Virus record (IMG/VR): IMGVR_UViG_3300042922_001182
Span: 62,001-126,000 of that record
Direction: 5' to 3' (one strand)
DNA: 64,000 bases
Shown: positions 8,936-30,438 of the stretch, piece after piece
How positions within the stretch are numbered: the stretch's first letter is position 1
How the letters are laid out: the number at the start of each line of letters is the position of its first letter
Notes under the pieces: generated by a model
Database searches by the model: none
What the model was told of the DNA's origin: nothing
The model's input: only the letters and a program-made list of their open reading frames with translations
Program-made: the position numbers and the translations under genes

Positions 8936-8948
8936 AGCCGAAGCGAAC

Positions 8949-9001
8949 AAAAAAGACGATCAGCAGCCCCTTACTCCGCCGTTGGAGTAAGGGGCTGCTG
9001 A
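8949..9001. terminator. Perfect 18-bp hairpin with A-run; terminator oriented for the minus strand
   Basis: TCAGCAGCCCCTTACTCC / GGAGTAAGGGGCTGCTGA; A6 at 8949-8954. Confidence 0.65.
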
Positions 9002-9058
9002 CCGGTTAAGACGGAAAGAGAGAAAGAAAGAACGCTCCGAGTGGCTCTCGCAGCATAC

Positions 9059-9070
9059 CATTGTAGTGTT
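9059..9070 (-). promoter_or_regulatory. Late-type promoter AACA-ctacaa-TG facing the 8960-9001 hairpin
   Basis: Reverse-complement match to AACA-N6-TG. Confidence 0.45.
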
Positions 9071-9187
9071 CCTTGACAATTCTCCAGGAAACGTAGAGAA
9101 TGAATCAGATAAGGTCTTGAATGTTGATTGAGATATTCAGCTAAATGTCAAGGAAAATCTTAAAGATTTAGCCATAAAACTGAAAGT

Positions 9188-9199
9188 AACATTGGATTG
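9188..9199 (+). promoter_or_regulatory. Late-type promoter AACA-ttggat-TG
   Basis: Motif match, but in an AT-rich island where chance matches are more likely. Confidence 0.35.
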
Positions 9200-9306
9200 A
9201 ACTTCGTTGAGAAACCTAGAGAGAATGTAATAAGAACCTAAAAAGACCTGGAAACGCGCACGCGAGAGCGCCAACGGGCGCACCGAGAGCAACACGGGAG
9301 GACGAG

Positions 9307-11513: not shown

Positions 11514-11542
11514 GTTTGCGCCGGGCCCTTCCGGGGTATGAT
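11514..11542 (+). promoter_or_regulatory. GTTTG-N15-GGGTATGAT element (SigB/SigF-like; overlaps a -10 TATGAT)
   Basis: Same geometry as 21710-21738. Confidence 0.5.
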
Positions 11543-11563
11543 AAGGGGCGGGCCCGCGTCAAG

Positions 11564-11573
11564 CACATATTAT
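11564..11573 (+). promoter_or_regulatory. Early-type motif CACATATTAT
   Basis: Exact copy of 16793 and 35905. Confidence 0.55.
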
Positions 11574-11652
11574 GAATCGGGACTACAACCGCCGGGAAAC
11601 CCTGGCAAGACCCGGCAGACAGCTAAACGTTTACAGAAAGGAAGGCTTAGCC

Positions 11653-13590
11653 TTGCACGACAGGATCGACATCGAGGCCTACCGCAACACCGACCGCTTC
11701 CTTGGGGAGGAGGTCCTCTTCCCCTTCGTGAGGAGCACCGACGGCTCGCGAGAGCTGATGGCCTCGTCCCAGGTCCACCAGGCGCTCGTCCTGACCAACG
11801 GTGAGTTCCCCCGCGTCTTCACCGGGTACGAGAACCAGGTGGGGAAGTACAGCTCCGCCTACCTCCGCGCCGAGCAGGAGCTCAAGATTCTCGAAGTCAT
11901 CGGGAAGAACCCGTACAACGCGCTCATCGTCTACGAGGACGAGGAGGGGACCATCGGCGTCATCTGGCGGAAGGAGTGCGAGAGCCTCTCCGAGCACTTC
12001 GGCTACCAGTACGACAACACCTACTTGGACGGGAAGTGGGAGGGCGACACGATCGCCAAGGGGGACGTCATCCGGCGGGGGACCGCCTACGACGAGGAGA
12101 TGAACTTCTCCTTCGGAACCAACCTCAGGGCGGTCTACATCCCCTGGGACGGAATGACCTTCGAGGACGCTATCGTCATCAGCGAGAGCACGTCCAAGAA
12201 GCTTGAGACCTCCTTGGTGGAGGTCGTCACGATCAACATGAACACCAACGACCTGGCCCTCAACCTCTACGGGGACGAGGATCCCAGCGGCTACAAGTCG
12301 TTCCCCGACATCGGCGAGGAGGTCAAGAACGGCATCCTCATGGCCCGTCGCCGCATCAACTACGAGTCCGCCCTTGTGGACCTGAGCACCAACCTCCTGA
12401 CCCAGGTCAACCCCAGTCGGGACACGGTGTTCTACTGCAACGGCACCGTGGTGGACATCGAGATCTTCAACAACGACGACGTCAACCGCCTGGAGAAGTA
12501 CGACTACAACGCCCAGATGCTCAAGTACCTGGCCGTGAACATGGAGTTCTACCGCGACGTGGACAGGGTCCTCGGCGCGTACATCAACGGCGGTCGCTCC
12601 TACACGGAGGACGCCGCCGCCGCCTACCGCCGCGCCCGGGACATCTGCAAGGATGGCGAGGAGCGCATCCGCTGGCGGCAGAACAAGAACGACTTCGAGT
12701 CCTACGTCATCCGGTTCACCCTGCTGCACAAGACCACGGCCAAGCCCGGGTCGAAGCTGGCGAACCGCTACGGCGGCAAGGGCGTCATCTCGCTCATCCT
12801 CCCCGACGACCAGATGCCGGTCAACGAGCACGGCGAGCGGGCCGAGATCATCCTCAGCCCTCTTGGCGTCACCAACCGCCTCAACCCGTCCCAGCTGATC
12901 GAGCAGGAGCTCAACTTCGTGGCGGACCACATCATGCGGGAGGCCAGGAAGGCGCCCGACACCATGACGGCGTGGGGTCTAATCCAGGACCTGCTCATCC
13001 AGGTCAGCCCCACCCAGGCGTCGGCCATGGCCAGCCACCTGTACAAGGAGGACATGGAGAGCTTCGTCAAGTCCATCCTGGACGACAAGCTCTACATCCA
13101 CCAGGCGCCGTTCTGGGGGAACCTGGACCTCGGCGGCCTGATCGAGCTGTACACCAAATACCCGTGGATCAAGCCCTACAAGATGAGCTGCTCCGAGAAG
13201 CCGCTGATCATGGGCGACATCTACTTCATGCTCCTGAAGCACGAGCCGATGACGAAGTTCTCGGTTCGCTCCACCAGCACCGTGAGCAACCGTGGCACCC
13301 CCTCCAAGAGCAGCCGCTACAAGGAGCACCAGCAGCCGTTCAGCCACACGCCGATCAAGATCGGCGAGATGGAGACCTTCAACATGTTCGCCACCGGCAA
13401 CTTCGAGGAGGTCCTCCGCATGCTCAACCTCTACTCCTCCAACCCGGGGGACAGAGAGCACCTCGCAAATGTTCTCCTCAAGACGAACATCTTCGACAGC
13501 AAGCAGGTAGATTCGCTCGGCGGCGAATCCAGCGTCAAGTCTATCATGGACGTACTGCTCACCAGCGCCGGTCTCCGGCTTACCGATTAG
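11653..13590 (+). CDS. RNA polymerase beta subunit, C-terminal half (probably non-virion RNAP)
   Basis: DGSRELMASSQVHQA, GMTFEDAIVISE, GSKLANRYGGKGVIS, IILSPLGVTNRLNPSQL, IKIGEME. The TTG11653 start is preferred (AAGGAAGG RBS) because ATG11572 lies inside the promoter motif. Confidence 0.9.
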   Translation: MHDRIDIEAYRNTDRFLGEEVLFPFVRSTDGSRELMASSQVHQALVLTNGEFPRVFTGYENQVGKYSSAYLRAEQELKILEVIGKNPYNALIVYEDEEGTIGVIWRKECESLSEHFGYQYDNTYLDGKWEGDTIAKGDVIRRGTAYDEEMNFSFGTNLRAVYIPWDGMTFEDAIVISESTSKKLETSLVEVVTINMNTNDLALNLYGDEDPSGYKSFPDIGEEVKNGILMARRRINYESALVDLSTNLLTQVNPSRDTVFYCNGTVVDIEIFNNDDVNRLEKYDYNAQMLKYLAVNMEFYRDVDRVLGAYINGGRSYTEDAAAAYRRARDICKDGEERIRWRQNKNDFESYVIRFTLLHKTTAKPGSKLANRYGGKGVISLILPDDQMPVNEHGERAEIILSPLGVTNRLNPSQLIEQELNFVADHIMREARKAPDTMTAWGLIQDLLIQVSPTQASAMASHLYKEDMESFVKSILDDKLYIHQAPFWGNLDLGGLIELYTKYPWIKPYKMSCSEKPLIMGDIYFMLLKHEPMTKFSVRSTSTVSNRGTPSKSSRYKEHQQPFSHTPIKIGEMETFNMFATGNFEEVLRMLNLYSSNPGDREHLANVLLKTNIFDSKQVDSLGGESSVKSIMDVLLTSAGLRLTD

Positions 13591-13603
13591 GAAAGAGAGA
13601 AAA

Positions 13604-14614
13604 ATGACCAAGAAGGCCTTCACCACCGTATTCCTCCCCGTCCGTCCCACGCTGGACGCGGCGGTCGCCTCGTACATCCTTTCCACCGAGCTGGCCGCCA
13701 CCGTCTGCAAGATGGTCGTCGTGCCCATCGGCAGCCCGCCGTTCGACCTGACGGACGGCCAGGCCTCTTTCCAGATCGTCAGCAGCAACCGTCGCGGCGA
13801 CTCGATGAAGTTCGTCCACCCCAAGGAGGGCGGCTCCGGCACCATGACCGAGAACGTCCTGGAGCTCCTGGACAAGGAGTCCCGGGCCAAGTACGCCCGG
13901 GTGACCAAGCTCGTCACCGAGGCGGCCCGAAAGCAGCGCGGCGGCGAGAGCCTGGCGACCATCGCGGCCCTCTATGACGCGATGACCGTCTACGGCTCGC
14001 CCGGGGAGGACACCTACGAGGTCATCACCCGCTTCTGGTCCATCCTGGGCTCCTTCGTCCAGGGCGAGGTGCGCCGCATGAAGGCCGAGAAGGACCTGAT
14101 CTCGAAGGTCGTCGATCGCCGGGAGACCGTCAAGTACAAGGGCGCGAACATCCGCATCGCCCGCATCTCCAAGCAGATCAACAACCGCGAGCTCGGCGCC
14201 ATCCTGTCGAAGTTCGACATGGTGGTCTACCAGGTTCGCAACGTCGCCCACGCCCTCAACAGCTACAACAAGGCCCCGGTGAAGGTGTCCATGAAGGACA
14301 TCGCCTCCAAGAAGCCGAACAGCGGTTGGTTCGTGAACGACCACGACACGATGATCAAGACCGAGGGCACCAAGACCAGCGTCTCCGAGCTCTTCGACCA
14401 CGTCATCCTGTCGCTCGGCGGCACCGTGAAGCGCAAGGAGAGGCAGGCCCCGGAGCCGAAGGTCATCGCCGTCGAGGAGATCACCCTCAGCCTCGAACCG
14501 ACCGACGACGTTTCCTTCAAGGCGTCCTCGGTCGTCGTGGAGGGTGAGCTCGTGGTGAAGGGCGACGTGACCGTCACCGCCCCGACCATCGACCTCCAGC
14601 CCACCGAGGCCTAG
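13604..14614 (+). CDS. Hypothetical protein
   Basis: Purine-rich RBS, strong codon bias. Confidence 0.75.
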   Translation: MTKKAFTTVFLPVRPTLDAAVASYILSTELAATVCKMVVVPIGSPPFDLTDGQASFQIVSSNRRGDSMKFVHPKEGGSGTMTENVLELLDKESRAKYARVTKLVTEAARKQRGGESLATIAALYDAMTVYGSPGEDTYEVITRFWSILGSFVQGEVRRMKAEKDLISKVVDRRETVKYKGANIRIARISKQINNRELGAILSKFDMVVYQVRNVAHALNSYNKAPVKVSMKDIASKKPNSGWFVNDHDTMIKTEGTKTSVSELFDHVILSLGGTVKRKERQAPEPKVIAVEEITLSLEPTDDVSFKASSVVVEGELVVKGDVTVTAPTIDLQPTEA

Positions 14615-14624
14615 TCCAACACAC

Positions 14625-14652
14625 GACCGGAAGCGCAACCGCGCTTCCGGTC
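14625..14652. terminator. Intergenic hairpin
   Basis: GACCGGAAGCGC / GCGCTTCCGGTC. Confidence 0.45.
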
Positions 14653-14677
14653 TCAGCCTTCTAAGAGAGGATTCCAA

Positions 14678-16786
14678 GTGTCCGATATCAGAATCGACAT
14701 CCGCCATGCCGCCATGGAGGCCATCGAGAACGGCACCCTGAAGGACAAGCCGACCCTGGCCAAGAGGCTCGGCGAGTTCTTGGAGCACTGCTCCGACGTC
14801 TACTACAACACCGGGGCCAAGGTCGTGTCCGACTGCGAGTACGACACCCTCCGGGACGGCCTCCGGGAGGCCACCAGGTCCAGCCTCCCCGTCGGGGCCA
14901 CCCCCCGCTCCGGCATGCTGACGGAGGAGCACGACTTCCCCGAGCTGGTCGGGACCCTGGACAAGCGAAACGTCGTATTCGGTGAGAAGAGCTTCCACGA
15001 GTGGCTGTTCAAGGCCATGACACGCGCCGGTGTGTCCAGGGCCCGTATGGCGGGTAGCCTCAAGCGGGACGGGAACAGCGCCGTGGTCACCTACCTCCGT
15101 GGCACCCCGGTCTCGGCGGTGACTCGCGGCAAGGACGGGAAGGGCGTGGACGTGCTCCACCTCCTCCCCAAGCACCGGATCTCCAACCCCTTCGCGGGGG
15201 ACTCCAAGCTCGGCATCAAGTACGAGATCATCATGCGGTACACCAAGCTCGACGCCCTCAACGAGGAGACCGGGCGCGGGTACGTCAGCCCCCGCAGCGT
15301 CGTCAGCGGGCTCCTGGGGAGCAAGGAGGCCTCCGAGGCGGCCCCCTACCTCTCCCTGGCCCCCCTGGACTACAAGCTGGAGGAGGGCGCGTATACGGAC
15401 GACAGGGGCGACCGGCTCGAAGTCCTGCACACCAACTCCATCGGCATCGAGGGCTGCGACGTCCTGCCCCTGGAGATGCTGGTCTTCGAGGGCGACGCCC
15501 AGGAGATCAGCGAGCAGCTCCAGTTCTGGTACGACGAGTGCATCAAGACCCGCCAGGACCTCGACTTCATGGTCGACGGCCTGGTGCTGGAGTTCCTTGA
15601 CGAGGACGTGCGGGAGGAGCTTGGCTGGACCGAGGACGGCTCCGAGCCACGCTGGGCCATGGCGCTCAAGTTCCCCTACATGGAGCAGACCACCAGGGCC
15701 CGTCGCTTCTTCCTGGAGATCGGGAACCTGGGCCGGGCCACCCCCATGGTGGAGTTCGACCCGGTGTACTTCAACGGCGCCAAGCAGACCAAGTGCTCGT
15801 TGGCCAACTGGAACCGCTGGGACAAGCTCGCCCCCATCGGGATCGGCACGGAGGGCCTGATCGAGTACCGCAACGACACGCTGTCGTACTTCGTCAAGCT
15901 CGACCTGGCGAGCAACGACCTCGTCGAGCCCTTCAAGTTCGAGGAGCGGTGCCCCTCGTGCGACACCCTGTTCTACTTCACGCACAACAAGGAAGGCGAG
16001 AGGGTGTTCGCCTACTGCACCAACTCCCACTGCCCCTCCGTCGTCGTCGGCAAGACGGTCAACTTCCTTGAGAAGATGGACGTCAAGCTGGTGAAGGAGT
16101 CGACGCTCAGGAAGCTGTACGACCACCACATGCTTCCGGCTGGCATCGAGAGCCTGTTCTCCCTCGACTACGAGGAGGTGGCGGTGCTCAACGGCCTCGG
16201 CAAGAAGTCGGCCGACGTCATCCGGCAGGCCGTGGAATCCATGAAGGGCTGCTGGGACTGGCAGCTCCTGGGGTCCCTCGGCATCGACAGCATCGGCAGG
16301 ACGCTGGCCAAGCGCCTGATGAAGGTCTACGACCTCTACGACCTGCTGGAGCTGATGAACGCCGAGGACAGCGCCGACGGCACCGAGAGGGCGTTCGTCC
16401 GCACCATCACCGCGACGGTCGAGGGCTTCGCCGAGAGCAAGAGCCAGAAGCTCTACGACGGCATCAACATCAACTGGGACCTGATCGTCTTCCTGTACGA
16501 GGCCCTGGAGCCGAAGACCTACCGGGACGAGCTGTCCAAGGCCAAGACCTCCGGTCCCAGCCTCAACCTGGTGGTGACCGGCTCGCTGAAGAACTGGTCC
16601 AGCCGCGACGAGCTGAAGGACAAGCTGGACCTCCTGGGCCACAAGATGTCCGACACGGTCAGCGCCAAGACCTCCTACCTCGTCACCAACACCCCCCACT
16701 CCGGGACCGGCAAGAACAAGAAGGCCCAGGAGCTCAAGGTCCCCATCATCACCGAGGACGAGCTGATGGCGATGCTCAACCTCTAG
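14678..16786 (+). CDS. ligA: NAD-dependent DNA ligase
   Basis: YY..G..V.SD.EYD, adenylation motif K.DG (LKRDG), TRGKDG.G.DV, DGLVLE, RWAMALKF, Zn finger CPSC...CTNSHC, HhH, C-terminal BRCT (VVTG..VSAKTSYLV). Confidence 0.93.
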   Translation: MSDIRIDIRHAAMEAIENGTLKDKPTLAKRLGEFLEHCSDVYYNTGAKVVSDCEYDTLRDGLREATRSSLPVGATPRSGMLTEEHDFPELVGTLDKRNVVFGEKSFHEWLFKAMTRAGVSRARMAGSLKRDGNSAVVTYLRGTPVSAVTRGKDGKGVDVLHLLPKHRISNPFAGDSKLGIKYEIIMRYTKLDALNEETGRGYVSPRSVVSGLLGSKEASEAAPYLSLAPLDYKLEEGAYTDDRGDRLEVLHTNSIGIEGCDVLPLEMLVFEGDAQEISEQLQFWYDECIKTRQDLDFMVDGLVLEFLDEDVREELGWTEDGSEPRWAMALKFPYMEQTTRARRFFLEIGNLGRATPMVEFDPVYFNGAKQTKCSLANWNRWDKLAPIGIGTEGLIEYRNDTLSYFVKLDLASNDLVEPFKFEERCPSCDTLFYFTHNKEGERVFAYCTNSHCPSVVVGKTVNFLEKMDVKLVKESTLRKLYDHHMLPAGIESLFSLDYEEVAVLNGLGKKSADVIRQAVESMKGCWDWQLLGSLGIDSIGRTLAKRLMKVYDLYDLLELMNAEDSADGTERAFVRTITATVEGFAESKSQKLYDGININWDLIVFLYEALEPKTYRDELSKAKTSGPSLNLVVTGSLKNWSSRDELKDKLDLLGHKMSDTVSAKTSYLVTNTPHSGTGKNKKAQELKVPIITEDELMAMLNL

Positions 16787-16792
16787 CACGAT

Positions 16793-16802
16793 CACATATT
16801 AT
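16793..16802 (+). promoter_or_regulatory. Early-type motif CACATATTAT overlapping hairpin 16799-16832
   Basis: Exact motif; TTATCCGAAAGACGC / GCGTCTTTCGGATAA inverted repeat. Confidence 0.55.
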
Positions 16803-16864
16803 CCGAAAGACGCGTGTGCGTCTTTCGGATAACTAACTTTTCTCTCTCGAAAGGAGATACGCGG

Positions 16865-17119
16865 ATGAAGAAGAACGACATCACCATGGCCTTCAAGCAT
16901 GTCAAGAGCGTGGTCGACCCCACCATCACCTACGAGGTCTCCCATTCCAAGAGCTCCCACGCCCCCGGGGCCAAGACCTTCATCAGCATCGACCCCGTCG
17001 AGCACATCGGCACCGACAAGGCAGCGCAGGCCCACATCGGCTCCGAGGTGGGGACCGGCGTCTACCTGGAGGACCTCCCGGCCGTGCTGGAGGCCGTCAA
17101 GTACGTCAGCGACGTCTAG
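16865..17119 (+). CDS. Hypothetical protein
   Basis: AAGGAG RBS. Confidence 0.7.
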   Translation: MKKNDITMAFKHVKSVVDPTITYEVSHSKSSHAPGAKTFISIDPVEHIGTDKAAQAHIGSEVGTGVYLEDLPAVLEAVKYVSDV

Positions 17120-17129
17120 GCGGTCGGGG

Positions 17130-17657
17130 ATGCACGGCCGATACGAGAACCTCCACTACTTCGAAGACTACCACGTCACCAAGGGGTTCTTCGACAGAGA
17201 GCCCATTTCCAAGAGCAGGAGCAAGAGATTGAAGACCAAGAAGAACAACGAGAAGAAGGCCAAGCGGGGGCAGCAACGGATCCGCCTCCCCGAGGGGGTC
17301 AGCGAGGAGAAGATGCGCGAGAAGCTCAGTGATTTCGTCTTCCATGCCCTGGGCCTGGAGCCGGGCGTCTACAACGTCGGCTCAGCGACGGCCCACGTCA
17401 AGGGTACCCCCGCCACCTGCTACGTCCGCGTGAAGCCCACCTGGTCCAGCGAGAGCAGCAAGATGTCGACCATCATCGTGACCCCCGAGTTCGCCGTCCT
17501 CTGCGAGACCGACAACTGGATCGACCTCGGTTGGCATGAGATCGGCAGCCGGTTCTACTACAAGAGCCTCAGCGAGCTGGAGGCCTGGCTCAGGGACCAG
17601 GTCCGCATGCCCGTGTCCCCCGCCTGGAAGGACAAGCTCCTTCCCATCGAGTCCTAA
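17130..17657 (+). CDS. Hypothetical protein (basic N-terminus)
   Basis: Codon bias from ATG17130. Confidence 0.65.
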   Translation: MHGRYENLHYFEDYHVTKGFFDREPISKSRSKRLKTKKNNEKKAKRGQQRIRLPEGVSEEKMREKLSDFVFHALGLEPGVYNVGSATAHVKGTPATCYVRVKPTWSSESSKMSTIIVTPEFAVLCETDNWIDLGWHEIGSRFYYKSLSELEAWLRDQVRMPVSPAWKDKLLPIES

Positions 17658-17666
17658 GGAGGGACC

Positions 17667-18236
17667 ATGCAAGAGAGAAACATCTACAGGGACCGAGACC
17701 TGGTCAAGTGCTGGCTCGACGCCGACGCCATCCTGTCGGGGGCTTCCAACCCGACGGCGGTGGCCCTGACCCTCCACCTGATGCTGTCGGCGCTCACCCA
17801 GCGTATCGGGGGCACCAAGAAGGCGGGGAAGTACGCCCCCGCCCTGGCCGTCCTGGCCCACCTCGACTACCTGATGACCGGCGAGTTCGCCTCCGGGGCG
17901 AAGGAGAGGGCCATCAACGAGGTCTGCCAGCTGATGACCTTCAGGAGCCAGCTGCTCACGCAGGGCAAGGACACCGACGACTACAACATCGAGTTCGGGG
18001 CGGACGGGAGCTACTGGCTCCTCTGGGACGGTGAGGTCGTCACCCTGGGGCAGGAGATGGCCGTCTACAACAGCCGACAAGAGCAAACCGGGACGGGCCT
18101 CGTCACCGGTTTCTCCTACGGGTACGCGACCGACTGGGACATCCCGTCGGAGCTCCGCTTCTGCGTCCTGGTCGGCCAGGTCCCCGTCGACATCACCCGC
18201 GTCAAGCCCATCAACCTCATCACGGAGAAGCGATGA
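17667..18236 (+). CDS. Hypothetical protein
   Basis: AAGGAGG RBS. Confidence 0.75.
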   Translation: MQERNIYRDRDLVKCWLDADAILSGASNPTAVALTLHLMLSALTQRIGGTKKAGKYAPALAVLAHLDYLMTGEFASGAKERAINEVCQLMTFRSQLLTQGKDTDDYNIEFGADGSYWLLWDGEVVTLGQEMAVYNSRQEQTGTGLVTGFSYGYATDWDIPSELRFCVLVGQVPVDITRVKPINLITEKR

Positions 18237-18418
18237 CCACCAACAACAGCGCAGATCGGGCCCGGGAGGCCGTATCCAAGACCGGCCACGCCACGTACCA
18301 AGGCCAGCCCATCCGGGAGTCCGTCGACGGGGGCTACCACGCTGGCCACAACCAGCGTTGGGTCCCCTGCCTGGACTCCGCCCTCTCTCACATCGAAGGG
18401 AGCAACAATGACCGATAA
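18233..18418 (+). CDS. Small hypothetical protein
   Basis: ATGA overlap with the upstream gene. Confidence 0.55.
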   Translation: MTTNNSADRAREAVSKTGHATYQGQPIRESVDGGYHAGHNQRWVPCLDSALSHIEGSNNDR

Positions 18419-19958
18419 GCAAGTTCTCTACCGCCTCGGTAGCACGCACGTCTCCACGTTCGGGTACCGCGTCGACGGCATCGGCCAGATCCTGGCGTTC
18501 TACGCCAAGGGACTGGACTCCAGCGGCGCGGTGGGCAACCAGCCCCTCGGTTACCTGTACGAGAAGCTGGACCCCGAGGTCAAGCTCTCCTCTATCCTGT
18601 TCGGCCGCTGCGACCCCTCCTTCACCGAGGAGAACGTCTACGAGGACGTGGTCAACGAGGGGCGAAAGCTGGCCTTCCTCCTGAACCCGTCGACCCGCCT
18701 CGCGGAGGCCCTGGCCTCGCTAGGGATCATCTACCTCAGCGAGGCCGACATGAGGTGGAAGTTCCCCAGGGGGAACTGGACCGACTGGTTCGTGGCGGAC
18801 ATCGCCCTGTGGAGCCCCATCCTCGACAAGCTGGAGGCGGACGAAGAGAAAACCATCTGCTTCAACTTCTCCTACGAGGGGGTCAATCACCGGGGGGAGG
18901 ACGGCTGGAGGTCCGCGATCCTCCACAGGGAGGCCCTCATCGAGCTCGCCACCAAGCACATCCGCTCCACCCTCCTCCAGGCAGCTGTGTGGGCCATGAG
19001 CGAAGGCACGTTCTCCGTCGCTGAGGAAGAGACGGCGGAACCCGCCAAGGAAGAGGAGGTCGAGGTGACGCTCTCACACGTCACTATCAGCCGAGCCATC
19101 GGGCTGCGGTACGCTGGTCGCTACCCCTCTGCATCGGACGCCCCCGCCCTTGTGATGCTACCGGGTGCCAACCGGCAGATCGTGTTCTCGCTGAGCTCCG
19201 TCCGGGAGGCCTTCTCCGACCCGCGAGGTCTCTGCAACGAGAGGATCTTCCGTCAGGTCCTCCGAGCAGGGATCATCGTCGACTTCCTCAGCAATGCCTT
19301 GTACGACGTTGAGGAGCTCGTCAAGGCAGAGGGGGCCGTGGTCGACGACCCCGAGGCGGGTGTGAAGGACGTCTTCGTCCTGGACTGCGCGTCCAGCGAG
19401 GACGAGCTCCACAACAACATGGTGGGCGTCATCACCGAGCTCGCCAGGGTGCGTCCCCGTGGCGCCACCCTGGACGATCCACCGGACGGCATCATCCGCT
19501 CCGACGACCCCGTGCCGGAGGACTTCTACGAGGAGTGGACCAGTGGGAGCACCCCCAGGAAGGCGCTCGCCGACTTCACCAGCCTTCTCCGGGATGACTG
19601 GGCCGAGAAGGAGCAGCCCTGCGGGTACGTCGATAGCTCCCTCGTGGAGGCGGCCCTGTCCAGGCAGGCTCTGTGGTACAGCGACGAGCCCATCACGAGG
19701 GAGATGTGCGAGGACCCTCGTGACTGGGACGAGATGCTCCGCCGGAACGAAACGAGGAAATCGGGAGACTACATCTCCTTCTGGTTCTCCATCGAGTTCA
19801 AGATGGTCTACCTCACCGCCGAGGCCTACCGGGCTTGGAGGCTGGGCGAGGTCGTGTTCGGCAACTTCCCCACGTTCACCGTCGAGGAGGCCGAGTCGAT
19901 CTACGAGCAGCGCTCCGGGGAGGCCGAGCTGGCCGACCGGGCAGAGGGCGAGGAGTAG
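18408..19958 (+). CDS. Acidic hypothetical protein, 516 aa
   Basis: AAGGGAG RBS, long ORF. Confidence 0.75.
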   Translation: MTDKQVLYRLGSTHVSTFGYRVDGIGQILAFYAKGLDSSGAVGNQPLGYLYEKLDPEVKLSSILFGRCDPSFTEENVYEDVVNEGRKLAFLLNPSTRLAEALASLGIIYLSEADMRWKFPRGNWTDWFVADIALWSPILDKLEADEEKTICFNFSYEGVNHRGEDGWRSAILHREALIELATKHIRSTLLQAAVWAMSEGTFSVAEEETAEPAKEEEVEVTLSHVTISRAIGLRYAGRYPSASDAPALVMLPGANRQIVFSLSSVREAFSDPRGLCNERIFRQVLRAGIIVDFLSNALYDVEELVKAEGAVVDDPEAGVKDVFVLDCASSEDELHNNMVGVITELARVRPRGATLDDPPDGIIRSDDPVPEDFYEEWTSGSTPRKALADFTSLLRDDWAEKEQPCGYVDSSLVEAALSRQALWYSDEPITREMCEDPRDWDEMLRRNETRKSGDYISFWFSIEFKMVYLTAEAYRAWRLGEVVFGNFPTFTVEEAESIYEQRSGEAELADRAEGEE

Positions 19959-19961
19959 GCC

Positions 19962-20651
19962 GTGGGCAGGGCCTTCTTCGCCTCCGAGGAGGACTGGGAC
20001 AGGATCCGCATAGCCCTCAAGGTGAAGAAGGTCGCCCACGGCATCCTGGCATGGCACCGGGAGCAAGGCAGGCATCACCTGCCTTGGCGGACGGAGAGGA
20101 CCCCCTACAGGGTCCTCACCTCCGAGTTCTTCCTGGGGAGGACGAGGGCCGAGCAGGTGGCCCCCGTCTTCCTCGCCATCCAGGAGAGATGGGCGGACCT
20201 TTCTTCTTTGGCCGCAGCCGACGCGGACGAGCTGAGGGAGGTGATACGACCGCTGGGGCTCATCGGAAGGGCCGACAGGCTGATCGCCACCGCCAACATG
20301 CTCCTGGAGCACCACGGCGGGATACCCGAGACCTGGCAGGAGCTCATCCAGTTCCCGGGTATGGGGCCCTACATCTCGGCGGCCACGGCCTGCTTCGCCT
20401 TCGGGCAGGAGGTCACCATCATCGACGCCAACGTCCTCAGGGTGTACCAGAGGATCTACGCGTCGGACCTGGAGGACGGGACGGTCACCCTGGGCTACCT
20501 GATCGAGGCCCACCCCCTCTACGCCCCGAGCTACGACGAGTGGAACTACGCCATCATCGACTTCGGCGGCCTGGTGTGCAAGGCCCGGGGTGCCAAGCAC
20601 GACCTGTGCCCCCTCACCGATGTCTGCGACCACTTCCAGATTAACCAGTGA
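19962..20651 (+). CDS. HhH-GPD DNA glycosylase (MIG T:G/U:G-mismatch-like rather than full MutY)
   Basis: LPWR...PYRVLTSE..L.RT, HhH LIQFPGMGPY, DANVLRV, Fe-S loop C-X6-H-X2-C-X5-C; no C-terminal 8-oxoG domain. Confidence 0.85.
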   Translation: MGRAFFASEEDWDRIRIALKVKKVAHGILAWHREQGRHHLPWRTERTPYRVLTSEFFLGRTRAEQVAPVFLAIQERWADLSSLAAADADELREVIRPLGLIGRADRLIATANMLLEHHGGIPETWQELIQFPGMGPYISAATACFAFGQEVTIIDANVLRVYQRIYASDLEDGTVTLGYLIEAHPLYAPSYDEWNYAIIDFGGLVCKARGAKHDLCPLTDVCDHFQINQ

Positions 20652-20662
20652 GGGGGCCTGCG

Positions 20663-20674
20663 AACAAACCCCTA
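20663..20674 (+). promoter_or_regulatory. Late-type promoter AACA-aacccc-TA
   Basis: Exact motif about 30 nt before ATG20706. Confidence 0.55.
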
Positions 20675-20705
20675 AGCAACGCAACTCGAACACAAGGAGA
20701 CCCGT

Positions 20706-21125
20706 ATGGAACTCAAGCGTGATAAGATCATCCTCCTGGAGCTCGACGAGAACGAGCTGACGGAGGTCGACAAGAAGAACGGCGTGCAGAAGGGCAAGGG
20801 CTATCGGGTCCACGCCGTGTACGACGGCAGCAGCAACCCGATCGCCACCTACGACGGCAAGCTGAACCGGACCGACCTGGACGCCCTGGAGAAGCTCCCC
20901 GAGGACACCGTCGTCGTCCTGGTGAGCGGTGTCCGGAACCCCGACCCCGACCCGTTCGTCTGGAGGCGCTACTCGCTCTCCGGCAGCTTCATCAAGAACG
21001 ACGGCGGTCAGATCCAGTTCGCCGGTCTGGTCAACGGTCGCGAGTGCGACGAGGCCGAGACCGCGTACCTGGACTTCGTCTTCCCCCGTTACCGCGCTCG
21101 GGCCTTCGCCCCCGCCAAGAGCTAG
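20706..21125 (+). CDS. Hypothetical protein
   Basis: AAGGAG RBS. Confidence 0.75.
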   Translation: MELKRDKIILLELDENELTEVDKKNGVQKGKGYRVHAVYDGSSNPIATYDGKLNRTDLDALEKLPEDTVVVLVSGVRNPDPDPFVWRRYSLSGSFIKNDGGQIQFAGLVNGRECDEAETAYLDFVFPRYRARAFAPAKS

Positions 21126-21131
21126 CCAAGT

Positions 21132-21200
21132 GCCCCATCCCTCGCCTGAGGGATGGGGCAAATGAAGAGAGCGATGGGCCGCTCGGGTCCATCGCTCTCT
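21132..21200. terminator. Two hairpins between convergent genes
   Basis: GCCCCATCCCTC/GAGGGATGGGGC and AGAGAGCGATGG/CCATCGCTCTCT. Confidence 0.55.
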
Positions 21201-21214
21201 GGTCTTGTTGTAGC

Positions 21215-21517
21215 TTACGCCTTCGCGGCGGGCTCGGCCTTGCGGCCGTTGACTTCGTCCTTCAGGCCCTTACCGGCCGAGAAGTACACCTGCTTGTGGG
21301 CGGCGATGTCGATCGCCTCGCCGGTGCGGGGGTTGTGGCCCTTCTTGGCTTCCACGTCGCGGGTCTTCAGGGTGCCGAAGTTGGTCAGCACGACGGTGCC
21401 GTCCTTCTGGAGGCCCGTGGTCAGACCCTTCAGGAGGCTGTCGACCACCAGGCCGGCGTCCTTCTTGGTCATGCTCAGGTCATCGGCGACGAAATCCACG
21501 AGATCGGTCTTGGTCAT
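21215..21517 (-). CDS. hup: HU family DNA-binding protein
   Basis: MTKTDLVDFVA...FGT...GHNPRTGEAIDI...FSAGKGLKD. Confidence 0.93.
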   Translation of the reverse strand: MTKTDLVDFVADDLSMTKKDAGLVVDSLLKGLTTGLQKDGTVVLTNFGTLKTRDVEAKKGHNPRTGEAIDIAAHKQVYFSAGKGLKDEVNGRKAEPAAKA

Positions 21518-21557
21518 TGTCTTTCTTCCTTTCGTTTGGCCCATAAGGGCACAGCTC

Positions 21558-21571
21558 AACATCGAATTGTT
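21558..21571. promoter_or_regulatory. Quasi-palindrome matching AACA-N6-TG on both strands
   Basis: CAACATCGAATTGTTG; the minus copy points to HU and the plus copy towards RNAP beta-N. Confidence 0.5.
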
Positions 21572-21709
21572 GTGTGGCGGGGGGTGGAAAACCCCCACCG
21601 CAGCGAGGGGCCGGGGATTAAGTCCTTACTACTGCGCCGTGATGGAAGCAAATATGATGGAGATGTCATTCGGCGCTCCGGCTTTTTGCCTGGCTCTGGG
21701 TCCCAAAGC

Positions 21710-21738
21710 GTTTGGGCCCGTTCAACTTCGGGTATAAT
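21710..21738 (+). promoter_or_regulatory. GTTTG-N15-GGGTATAAT element (SigB/SigF-like; overlaps a perfect TATAAT)
   Basis: Same geometry as 11514-11542. Confidence 0.5.
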
Positions 21739-21806: not shown

Positions 21807-23225
21807 ATGAAGAAATTCCTGAGCGAATTCTCTCCCGGTGAGCCCTTCAACGAGGAGTTCATCTTCGCCAAGGACAACGACGACGTGCTTGCCTACGTGG
21901 ACGACGTGGCGGCCACCCTCAACGTGATCGAGGGCGTCGAATACCTGGGGAGCGAGCTGATCGCCGACGAGACGGAGCTACGGCCCCGTCAGGAGGACGG
22001 CAAGCAGTGGATGAGCCTCGACGAGAGCCGCCTCGACATCATTAGGATGCAGTGGCGTATCACGAAGGGGGAGGAAACCGAGGTGATCACCCAGGAGGTG
22101 CTCTACCCCAAGCTCATCGACCACCACTACTACCTGATCAACGGGGTGAAGTGCTACCCCATCTACCAGATCGTGGACTCGGAGTGCTTCAAGACCTCCA
22201 GGTCGGTGACGCTCAAGACGATGGTCATGCCCATCATCCTGCGCCACGAGCCGGAGGAGTTCGAGGACATGGAGGGGAACGTCTACAACGCCCACTCCTA
22301 CAAGCTCCACCTGTTCCACTACAAGATCAACTACCTGCTCTACTACCTCTCCAAGAAGGGGTTCGAGCAGACCATCGAGTACATGGGCTGGGACGCCTAC
22401 CACCTGGGGCTGCTGGACGCCGAAGAGGCGAGCGGCATCGACCAGGAGGTCTACCGCCTGTTCAAGGTCTCCGGGACCAGCGTGCTGTACGCCTCCAAGG
22501 AGATGCTGCAGGACCGCAACGGGCTCGACATGGTGGCGTCGCTGCTGGACGTGCTGGAGGGCAAGACCCGCCCCGAGAAGGCGGCGGAGATCGAGTACTG
22601 GAAGCGCAAGCTCGGCTCGGTGTTCACCAAGAACACCGTCAACTACGTCGAGAAGGCCGAGAGCATCAGCATCTCCTTCGAGCGCATCATCGGAAGCCGC
22701 GAGCACAAGGTGCTCCGGATCGACGACGAGGACAAGAAGGACACCTACAGCGTCGTGCGCTGGATGGTGAGGAACTACGAGGAGCTGCACCGCCAGGACA
22801 ACATGGACCTGCGCCACAAGCGCATCCGCCTGCACGAGTACCAGCTCTACCCGCTCCTGACTAAGCTGTCGACCGGCCTGTACCGGGCCCTCAACACCAA
22901 GGACCCCAAGTTCAACGACCTGAAGCAGATCCTGCGCGTCGGCCCCGGCCACGTCATCAAGCGCCTGCTCAACAACGACCTGCTGCGGTACAGCAGCGCC
23001 GTCAACGGCATGGACCTCTTCAACAGCGCGTTGAAGTTCTCCTTCCGTGGCCCGCAATCGCTGGCCGACGGCGGTAAGACGATCTCGACCAAGTACCGGG
23101 GCATCCACCCCAGCTACATCGGTCGGATCGCGCTCAACACCAGCTCGAACGGCGACCCCGGCATGGGTGGCACGTTCTGCCCGTTCATCCAGCCCCACGG
23201 CCAGTACTTCACCAAGGAGAGATAA
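21807..23225 (+). CDS. RNA polymerase beta subunit, N-terminal half (probably non-virion RNAP)
   Basis: YPKL....YYLINGVK..PIYQI, DNMDLRHKRIR..E, and KFSFRGP...YRGIHPSYIGRI....SSNGDPG match RpoB (R.VHPTHYGR.CP..TPEG...G). Confidence 0.88.
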   Translation: MKKFLSEFSPGEPFNEEFIFAKDNDDVLAYVDDVAATLNVIEGVEYLGSELIADETELRPRQEDGKQWMSLDESRLDIIRMQWRITKGEETEVITQEVLYPKLIDHHYYLINGVKCYPIYQIVDSECFKTSRSVTLKTMVMPIILRHEPEEFEDMEGNVYNAHSYKLHLFHYKINYLLYYLSKKGFEQTIEYMGWDAYHLGLLDAEEASGIDQEVYRLFKVSGTSVLYASKEMLQDRNGLDMVASLLDVLEGKTRPEKAAEIEYWKRKLGSVFTKNTVNYVEKAESISISFERIIGSREHKVLRIDDEDKKDTYSVVRWMVRNYEELHRQDNMDLRHKRIRLHEYQLYPLLTKLSTGLYRALNTKDPKFNDLKQILRVGPGHVIKRLLNNDLLRYSSAVNGMDLFNSALKFSFRGPQSLADGGKTISTKYRGIHPSYIGRIALNTSSNGDPGMGGTFCPFIQPHGQYFTKER

Positions 23226-30321: not shown

Positions 30322-30395
30322 GCCTTCGTAGCTCAGCTGGACAGAGCGGGTCCGTCCTAAGGACAAGGTCGGGGGTTCGAATCCCTCCGGGGGCG
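30322..30395 (+). tRNA. tRNA-Arg (anticodon CCT), CCA not encoded
   Basis: Acceptor GCCTTCG/CGGGGGC, D-arm GCTC/GAGC, anticodon loop GT-CCT-AA, T-loop GGTTCGAATCC. Confidence 0.88.
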
Positions 30396-30438
30396 CTCGC
30401 CGAAAGGCGCTAACGGCAAAGAGAAGGAGAGAAGCAAC

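What the first reader, a model, noticed from the sequence alone, without database searches (positions are those of the whole stretch)
11514..21738. Both non-virion RNAP beta genes share a GTTTG-N15-GGGTATRAT element resembling host stress-sigma promoters
Seen: 11514-11542 (GTTTGcg...GGGTATGAT) and 21710-21738 (GTTTGgg...GGGTATAAT) have identical spacing, lie 10 kb apart, and each precedes one half of the same enzyme. I did not notice the element in other intergenic gaps. Known: SigB/SigF-type promoters are GTTT.. plus about 14 nt plus GGGTAT; TATAAT/TATGAT is the housekeeping -10; phiKZ/AR9 transcription is described as independent of host RNAP. Inference: a host-sigma input onto the enzyme that commits the phage to late transcription, potentially a stress-triggered exit from a carrier or dormant state.
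Basis: partly seen in the sequence, partly recalled or inferred. Interest (0 to 1): 0.75.

Follow-up and report, generated by a model that had tools for sequence, protein, structure and literature searches.

The report
SigB-like promoter boxes, jumbo phage
A soil jumbo phage that encodes its own two RNA polymerases also carries five exact copies of a two-box DNA motif resembling a bacterial stress-sigma promoter, two of them before its polymerase beta genes, which hints, without proof, that the host's polymerase may also read a few phage genes.

Summary
GTTTG-N15-GGGTATRAT sits at 11514-11542 and 21710-21738, upstream of the homologues of the AR9 non-virion RNAP beta C-terminal and N-terminal halves.

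The conserved core is GTTT-N16-GGGTAT. The 239-kb genome has five exact copies. All are intergenic, all point toward the next gene, and all have exactly N16 spacing. Shuffled intergenic DNA gives 0.02 copies. The other three copies precede a GyrB-like gene, a homologue of AR9 RefSeq gp199, and an unknown ORF cluster, so the element is not specific to the nvRNAP. It is absent before the beta' N, beta' C and specificity-subunit operons, in AR9, and in about 80 kb of high-GC relatives.

The phage keeps both AR9 promoter classes: early (vRNAP) CACATATTAT-N6-G and late (nvRNAP) AACA-N6-TA. A canonical early promoter lies 21 nt downstream of site 1. A variant (ATATGAT-N6-G) lies about 50 nt upstream of site 2's GTTT box.

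The motif matches SigB/SigF-type consensus in sequence and spacing, and I found no phage sigma. My best reading is a third, host-sigma-type promoter class that supplements vRNAP promoters (confidence 0.4). No TSS data exist and the host is unknown. The idea of a stress-triggered exit from dormancy is untested and incomplete.

The parts
11514..11518 (+). -35-like box GTTTG of site 1 (family core GTTT)
11534..11542 (+). -10-like box GGGTATGAT of site 1 (family core GGGTAT, then R-A)
11563..11580 (+). Canonical phage early (vRNAP-type) promoter GCACATATTAT-N6-G, with predicted +1 G at 11580. It starts 21 nt after the end of the -10-like box.
   Evidence: AR9 consensus AAATATATATTAT-(6N)-G in PMC5312081
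11653..13590 (+). nvRNAP beta subunit, C-terminal half. The likely true start is TTG 11653, preceded by the RBS AAAGGAAGG. The database call from ATG 11572 begins upstream of the predicted early TSS.
   Evidence: (AR9 alignment begins at residue 32 of the 672-aa ORF)
21215..21598 (-). HU-like DNA-binding protein gene, divergent from beta-N. This arrangement is conserved in relatives.
21648..21665 (+). Variant early-type promoter GCAAATATGAT-N6-G, with predicted +1 G at 21665. It is the only intergenic ATATGAT in the genome. ATATGAT-N6-G is the early form in high-GC relatives.
21710..21714 (+). -35-like box GTTTG of site 2
21730..21738 (+). -10-like box GGGTATAAT of site 2
21807..23225 (+). nvRNAP beta subunit, N-terminal half (homologue of the AR9 subunit called gp105 in PMC5312081, RefSeq locus tag gp104)

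Best explanation
The two sites belong to a small third promoter class in an AR9/PBS1-like jumbo phage from a soil metagenome (63.5% GC). Shown: the class is the bipartite motif GTTT(S)-N15-GGGTAT(R)A. It has five exact copies, all intergenic, all on the coding strand of the next gene, and all with the same spacing. They lie 44-162 nt before the start codons of nvRNAP beta-C, nvRNAP beta-N, a GyrB-like gene, a homologue of AR9 RefSeq gp199, and an unknown ORF cluster. Also shown: the phage keeps the two AR9 promoter classes. These are vRNAP early promoters (cCACATATTAT-N6-G) and nvRNAP late promoters (AACA-N6-TA). The third-class boxes sit in early-gene regions: four of the five have an early-type promoter 20-80 nt away, while the copy at 210611 has its nearest one about 590 nt upstream, beyond an intervening gene. 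Inferred: a two-box element with rigid spacing and this sequence is what a sigma-70-family factor of the SigB/SigF group reads. No sigma gene is detectable in the phage. So the most likely reader is host RNA polymerase carrying a SigB/SigF-like sigma. That would add transcription dependent on host state to a few early operons whose main drive is the injected vRNAP.
For: The sites are exact and chance is very unlikely: 5 observed versus 0.022 in shuffles, and none at spacings N8-15 or N18-21. All five are intergenic and co-oriented with the next gene. [quoted passage not shown] No Sigma70_r2 or r4_2 domain is encoded; the only hit is a weak r4-like HTH in a zinc-ribbon ORF. The phage's own two promoter classes are different, single short boxes, and two family members (TATAAG, TATGAA) break the early-promoter core. 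nvRNAP genes here lack AACA late promoters, so a second promoter type could provide the continued expression that AR9 obtains from tandem early plus late promoters.
Against: No transcription start data exist, since no RNA run was listed. The host is unknown, so whether it has a SigB/SigF-type sigma is untested. AR9 and phiKZ-type infections are described as independent of host RNAP. The element is absent from AR9 and from about 80 kb of high-GC relatives. Five of five exact matches with no near-misses is more typical of promoters for a phage-specific factor than of host-sigma regulons. Early promoters nearby already explain expression at most of these loci. If the DNA contains dU, as in AR9, recognition by a host sigma is uncertain; the hints for dU are the AACA late promoters and a 5'(3')-deoxyribonucleotidase homologue.
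Confidence: 0.4

Rival explanations
1. It is a third promoter class read by a phage polymerase, either nvRNAP or vRNAP with an unrecognised phage specificity factor. It would act as a middle or continuous promoter, playing the role that tandem early plus late promoters play at AR9 nvRNAP genes.
For: AR9 places a second promoter in tandem with the early one at four of five nvRNAP genes. Here nvRNAP genes lack AACA late promoters. All five copies are exact with no degenerate variants, as is typical for phage-factor promoters. The infection type is reported to be independent of host RNAP.
Against: Known jumbo-phage RNAP promoters are single short boxes near -10 or the TSS, not -35/-10 pairs. No candidate factor was found. 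The motif coincides with a known bacterial sigma consensus. Only 2 of 5 nvRNAP operons carry it.
Confidence: 0.25
2. It is a housekeeping sigma-A/sigma-70 promoter, with TATRAT as the real -10 box and the GGG a host-specific extension.
For: Three of five copies read TATAAT or TATGAT. Two further TATAAT sites precede the beta' N operon (TTGCGC-N17-TGTTATAAT at genome 1652) and the gp226-like operon (GGGTATAAT at 188441), so 4 of 5 nvRNAP operons have a TATRAT box. The hypergeometric probability is about 4e-6, but the grouping was made after seeing the data.
Against: Two family members read TATAAG and TATGAA, losing the critical last T. Matches to the -35 consensus TTGACA are at most 3 of 6, and the generic sigma-70 scan does not call either site. 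High-GC relatives use TATAAT-N6-G as an early (vRNAP) variant, so the two extra TATAAT sites are ambiguous.
Confidence: 0.1
3. It is not a promoter but an operator for a phage or host DNA-binding protein that tunes nearby early promoters.
For: It lies next to early promoters, and the matches are exact.
Against: The two boxes are unrelated in sequence, neither direct nor inverted repeats. Orientation is strictly co-directional with genes. The distance to the early core varies from about 11 nt downstream to about 590 nt away.
Confidence: 0.1
4. One reading: host stress-sigma input onto the nvRNAP acts as a switch that lets a dormant or carrier-state genome commit to late transcription.
For: It shares the evidence for the best explanation. 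AR9/PBS1 relatives are known from my own background knowledge to persist in carrier states.
Against: Only the two beta halves carry the element. The beta' N, beta' C and specificity-subunit operons do not, so the sigma input alone could not build the enzyme. Three copies serve unrelated genes.
Confidence: 0.07
5. It is a chance resemblance with no function.
For: Only five copies exist, and the motif is not conserved in relatives.
Against: 5 observed versus 0.022 expected, with a single spacing, all intergenic and all co-oriented.
Confidence: 0.03

Closest known systems
SigB/SigF-type (group 3 sigma-70 family) promoters of Firmicutes and Actinobacteria
   Same: GTTT at -35, GGGTAT at -10 with invariant GGG and A at position 5, and 14 nt between hexamers (GTTT-N16-GGG). 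Compare M. smegmatis SigF GTTT-N15/16-GGGTA and S. coelicolor GTTTGC-N14-GGGTAC.
   Different: The motif is on a phage that encodes two multisubunit RNAPs. All five copies are exact rather than degenerate. The host, the sigma and the TSS are all unknown.
AR9 tandem early plus late promoters in front of nvRNAP genes (continuous expression class)
   Same: A second promoter-like element sits next to a vRNAP early promoter upstream of nvRNAP subunit genes. The early and late consensus motifs themselves are conserved here.
   Different: The partner element is not AACA-N6-TA but a bipartite sigma-type motif. It is found at only 2 of 5 nvRNAP operons and at three unrelated operons.
T7-type logic (host RNAP transcribes the phage RNAP gene) and N4 (injected vRNAP first, host RNAP used later)
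   Same: If the best reading is right, host holoenzyme contributes to expression of a phage RNAP. This comparison rests on my own knowledge of those systems.
   Different: T7 has no injected polymerase and depends fully on host sigma-70 early. Here an injected vRNAP and its promoters are present, so any host input would be supplementary.

Membership tests
SigB/SigF-type promoter | -35 box GTTT | tested here: met
   Exact GTTT in all five copies
SigB/SigF-type promoter | -10 box GGG(T/A)A(T/A), with invariant GGG and A at position 5 | tested here: met
   GGGTAT in all five copies; consensus taken
SigB/SigF-type promoter | Spacing of 12-14 nt between hexamers (GTTT-N14-16-GGG) | tested here: met
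   Exactly N16 in 5 of 5, and none at N8-15 or N18-21
SigB/SigF-type promoter | Transcription start about 6-10 nt downstream, dependent on the sigma factor | not testable with these tools
   No RNA run was listed for this genome
SigB/SigF-type promoter | A cognate sigma is available, from the host or the phage | tested here: inconclusive
   No sigma, STAS or SpoIIE domains in the phage. The host is unknown, as the source is a soil metagenome.
AR9-type vRNAP early promoter | Core ATAT(N)AT preceded by CAC, with G(+1) six nt downstream | tested here: not met
   The element has G rather than A at -13 and GGG rather than CAC. Two family members end in TATAAG or TATGAA. Separate genuine early motifs lie beside the sites.
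AR9-type nvRNAP late promoter | AACA-N6-TA about 36-59 nt before the start codon | tested here: not met
   None at either site or at any nvRNAP operon
Housekeeping sigma-70/sigma-A promoter | TTGACA-like -35 box, 16-18 nt spacer, TATAAT-like -10 box with final T | tested here: not met
   The -35 box matches TTGACA at 3 of 6 positions at most, and the consensus scan does not call the sites. The final T is missing in 2 of 5 copies.

The most novel reading that the evidence does not exclude
An AR9-like jumbo phage, a group thought to be transcriptionally autonomous, has wired a handful of early operons (both nvRNAP beta halves, a gyrase subunit and others) to a host general-stress or differentiation sigma (SigB/SigF type). 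Host physiological state would then gate or rescue the phage programme, for example by restarting transcription from a genome whose injected vRNAP has been lost during dormancy.
Probability: 0.12. Interest if true: 0.85.

Novelty: new variant of a known kind. Interest (0 to 1): 0.6.

Why it matters
phiKZ- and AR9-type phages are the standard example of infection that does not need the host RNA polymerase. A statistically solid, sigma-type bipartite promoter class beside vRNAP promoters would be the first sequence-level hint that such a phage also listens to a host sigma factor. If a phage enzyme reads it instead, then a jumbo-phage RNAP can use -35/-10-style promoters. Either outcome can be tested directly with five defined sites. 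As a by-product, the AR9 early and late promoter motifs are shown to be conserved in a 63.5% GC relative, where they stand out cleanly and give a ready promoter map.

Tried and rejected
- **RNA evidence.** The only listed run holding this DNA is a soil metagenome DNA run, and no RNA run was listed. I therefore did not use read laying.
- **Known RNA families or a structured leader.** Rfam finds only a tRNA-Arg in the window and nothing near the other sites. Predicted leaders fold no better than shuffles, with z-scores from +0.1 to -1.6.
- **Phage-encoded sigma or partner-switching proteins.** No Sigma70_r2, r4_2, STAS or SpoIIE domains were found. The only hit is a weak r4-like HTH in a zinc-ribbon ORF at genome 229010-229543.
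- **Generic sigma-70 scan.** It does not call the sites.
- **'TATAAT before 4 of 5 nvRNAP operons'.** This was striking at first. I downgraded it because high-GC relatives use TATAAT-N6-G as an early-promoter variant and because the robust family core is GGGTAT, not TATAAT.
- **Conservation in relatives.** The nearest relatives are only 47-52% identical in protein. Their upstream regions carry early-type motifs but no GTTT-N16-GGGTA. IMG/VR relatives are 24-43% GC and uninformative for this motif, though 12 of 32 show the early motif before beta-N. AR9 shows no enrichment, with 5 matches against 6 in the control.
- **Host inference from GyrB homologues.** It was uninformative.
- **Repeat or mobile-element origin.** The spacers differ apart from short shared runs, such as GCCCTTCCG in two copies.
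Full report
**What the window is.** The window is bases 62001-126000 of a single 238,984-bp contig. It is an IMG/VR virus record with direct terminal repeats, 63.5% GC. The only listed sequencing run that holds it is a soil metagenome DNA run. Its RNA polymerase genes are closest to those of Bacillus phage AR9/PBS1.
- ORF 11572/11653-13590 has Pfam Rpb2_6. It is 42% identical to the AR9 protein annotated as non-virion RNAP beta, C-terminus.
- ORF 21807-23225 is 40% identical to AR9 non-virion RNAP beta, N-terminus.
- The 10-kb separation of the two genes is the same as in AR9.

**The observation.** Both strings are exactly where stated, and they are the only matches in the window even with two mismatches allowed (0.17 expected).

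**The phage's own promoters.** I called genes by GC3 and looked for k-mers enriched in upstream intergenic DNA. The dominant motif is cCACATATTAT.
- ATAT-N-AT occurs 31 times in the genome. Of these, 26 are intergenic, and 21 of those 26 have G exactly six bases downstream.
- This is the AR9 early (vRNAP) promoter, AAATATATATTAT-(6N)-G(+1) (PMC5312081).
- The AR9 late (nvRNAP) motif AACA-N6-TA is also conserved. It appears 29 times in upstream sense orientation against 2.3 expected, is specific to that spacing, and usually lies 36-59 nt before the start codon.

Both AR9 transcription classes are thus present and easy to read in this high-GC genome.

**Early promoters beside the two sites.**
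- A canonical early promoter, GCACATATTAT-N6-G (11563-11580), starts 21 nt after the end of the GGGTATGAT box of site 1. Its predicted start at 11580 lies downstream of the database's ATG at 11572. The AR9 alignment begins at residue 32 of that ORF, so the real start is probably TTG 11653 behind the RBS AAAGGAAGG.
- About 50 nt upstream of site 2's GTTT box (80 nt before its GGGTATAAT box) lies GCAAATATGAT-N6-G (21648-21665). It is the only intergenic ATATGAT in the genome.
- High-GC relatives use ATATGAT-N6-G, ATATCAT-N6-G and TATAAT-N6-G as their early form.
- In relatives the same divergent gap between an HU-like gene and beta-N carries an early-type motif, as do 12 of 32 low-GC IMG/VR relatives.

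The two beta genes therefore need no host promoter to be expressed, as in AR9, where the beta N-terminal subunit gene is an early gene.

**What the element is.** Genome-wide, the full nine-base GGGTATRAT occurs five times, but the sharper definition is the bipartite core GTTT-N16-GGGTAT.

| Genome start | Window start | Downstream gene | Evidence |
|---|---|---|---|
| 53276 | outside | GyrB-like | |
| 73514 | 11514 | nvRNAP beta-C | |
| 83710 | 21710 | nvRNAP beta-N | |
| 156870 | outside | homologue of AR9 RefSeq gp199 | |
| 210611 | outside | ORF cluster with no matches | |

- All five copies are on the + strand, intergenic, and co-oriented with the next gene.
- The spacing histogram is empty from N8 to N15 and from N18 to N21. 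There is a single N17 hit on the minus strand, which is the reverse complement of an early promoter.
- No one-mismatch variants exist at N16.
- Dinucleotide-preserving shuffles of the intergenic DNA give a mean of 0.022 and never more than 1 in 3000 trials.
- The motif was defined from the two in-window sites, so the three extra copies outside the window are an independent confirmation (about 0.13 expected).
- The bases after GGGTAT are AAG, GAT, AAT, AAT and GAA. The shared -10 box is therefore GGGTAT(R)A, not TATAAT.

**Comparison with known promoter types.**
- The motif equals the SigB/SigF-type consensus: B. subtilis SigB GTTTAA-N12-14-GGG(A/T)A(A/T); S. coelicolor SigB-homologue promoters such as GTTTGC-N14-GGGTAC; and M. 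smegmatis SigF GTTT-N15/16-GGGTA.
- It is not an early promoter. It has the wrong bases at -16 to -13, and two copies lack the final T.
- It is not a late promoter, since it has no AACA.
- It is a poor housekeeping promoter. The -35 box matches TTGACA at 3 of 6 positions at most, the generic scan does not call it, and two copies lack the final T.
- Two unrelated boxes at a rigid distance are the signature of a sigma-70-family factor. Known jumbo-phage RNAP promoters are single short boxes.
- The phage encodes no detectable sigma, anti-sigma antagonist or SpoIIE-type phosphatase.

I located the other nvRNAP genes.
- beta' N starts at about genome 2346 and runs to 3736, behind a 210-aa ORF.
- beta' C is at 144915-146873.
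- The specificity subunit (AR9 gp226-like) starts at about 189430 and runs to 190922, behind a 276-aa ORF that is 43% identical to its AR9 neighbour.
- None of these has GTTT-N16-GGGTAT.
- Two of them have a perfect TATAAT box: TTGCGC-N17-TGTTATAAT at 1652, and GGGTATAAT at 188441 with a poor -35 box. These could be early-promoter variants of the TATAAT-N6-G kind seen in relatives.
- beta' C has only an early-type motif.

The element is also absent from AR9 and from the high-GC relatives sampled. The link to the nvRNAP as such is weak. The element is a genuine small regulon-like set that happens to include both beta halves.

**Mechanism.** Shown: a non-random, oriented, bipartite element that matches a bacterial alternative-sigma consensus and sits in early-gene regions, next to vRNAP early promoters at four of its five sites. 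Inferred: host RNAP with a SigB/SigF-like sigma initiates 6-10 nt downstream and adds host-state-dependent transcription to these operons.

My confidence is 0.4, for these reasons:
- There are no start-site data.
- The host is unknown.
- This phage group is described as independent of host RNAP.
- The five-of-five exactness would also suit a phage-specific factor.
- The DNA may contain dU. The hints are the AR9-type AACA promoters and a 5'(3')-deoxyribonucleotidase homologue.

The main rival (0.25) is a phage-RNAP 'middle/continuous' class, which would replace the late promoters that AR9 puts in tandem at its nvRNAP genes. Notably, the nvRNAP genes here lack AACA promoters.

**Verdict.** I classify it as a new variant of a known kind, a sigma-type promoter set in a two-RNAP jumbo phage. 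Interest is 0.6.

Noticed in passing
window 11572-11655: The database gene call for nvRNAP beta-C (672 aa from ATG 11572) starts inside the early promoter and upstream of its predicted +1 at 11580. TTG 11653, behind the RBS AAAGGAAGG, is the likelier start, and homologue alignments begin near residue 28-32.
   Followed up: partly
G000:C1:1652-1657 and 188441-188449 (outside the window): Perfect TATAAT boxes that do not overlap the early motif precede the operons holding nvRNAP beta' N (TTGCGC-N17-TGTTATAAT) and the gp226-like specificity subunit (GGGTATAAT). Together with the two beta sites, 4 of 5 nvRNAP operons have a TATRAT box. It is unclear whether these are sigma-A-like promoters or TATAAT-N6-G early variants.
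   Followed up: partly
G000:C1:188440-188570: A GGGTATAAT box on the + strand faces an early promoter (TGTATATTATACCC) embedded in an 8-bp inverted repeat, with GC-rich hairpins between them. There is no Rfam or tRNA match, and the fold z-score is -2.1.
   Followed up: partly
G000:C1 early promoters at 127805, 140627, 181767, 196778, 197982, 236262: A subclass of early promoters carries an extra upstream box GAAAC(C/T)GAATCTA about 12-15 nt before the core, and TGAC or TGAG just downstream. This may be a separately regulated early subset.
   Followed up: no
window 8936-9306: A 370-nt AT-rich (46% GC) non-coding gap begins with a 20-bp perfect terminator-like hairpin (8957-9004). It contains TTGACA-N17-GAGAAT but no early or late motif.
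   Followed up: no
G000:C1:139672-142240 (minus strand): The family-B DNA polymerase homologue is in two pieces (141032-142240 and 139672-140457), separated by about 570 nt that hold a small plus-strand ORF and an early-type motif. This could be an intron or intein-like insertion, as is common in AR9.
   Followed up: no
G000:C1:137991-138770 (minus strand): A homologue of the AR9 5'(3')-deoxyribonucleotidase (31% identity), together with the conserved AACA late promoters, hints that this phage may also have dU-containing DNA. No Ugi homologue was found by tblastn.
   Followed up: partly
G000:C1:152496-156647 (minus strand): The second beta-like gene, presumably the virion RNAP beta, is a single fused 1383-aa ORF rather than split halves. 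It has an AACA-N6-TA late promoter 46 nt upstream.
   Followed up: partly
window 30322-30396: The genome's only tRNA gene is a single tRNA-Arg(CCT).
   Followed up: no
window 21215-21598 (minus strand): An HU-like DNA-binding protein gene lies divergent from nvRNAP beta-N. This arrangement is conserved in all four high-GC relatives examined.
   Followed up: partly
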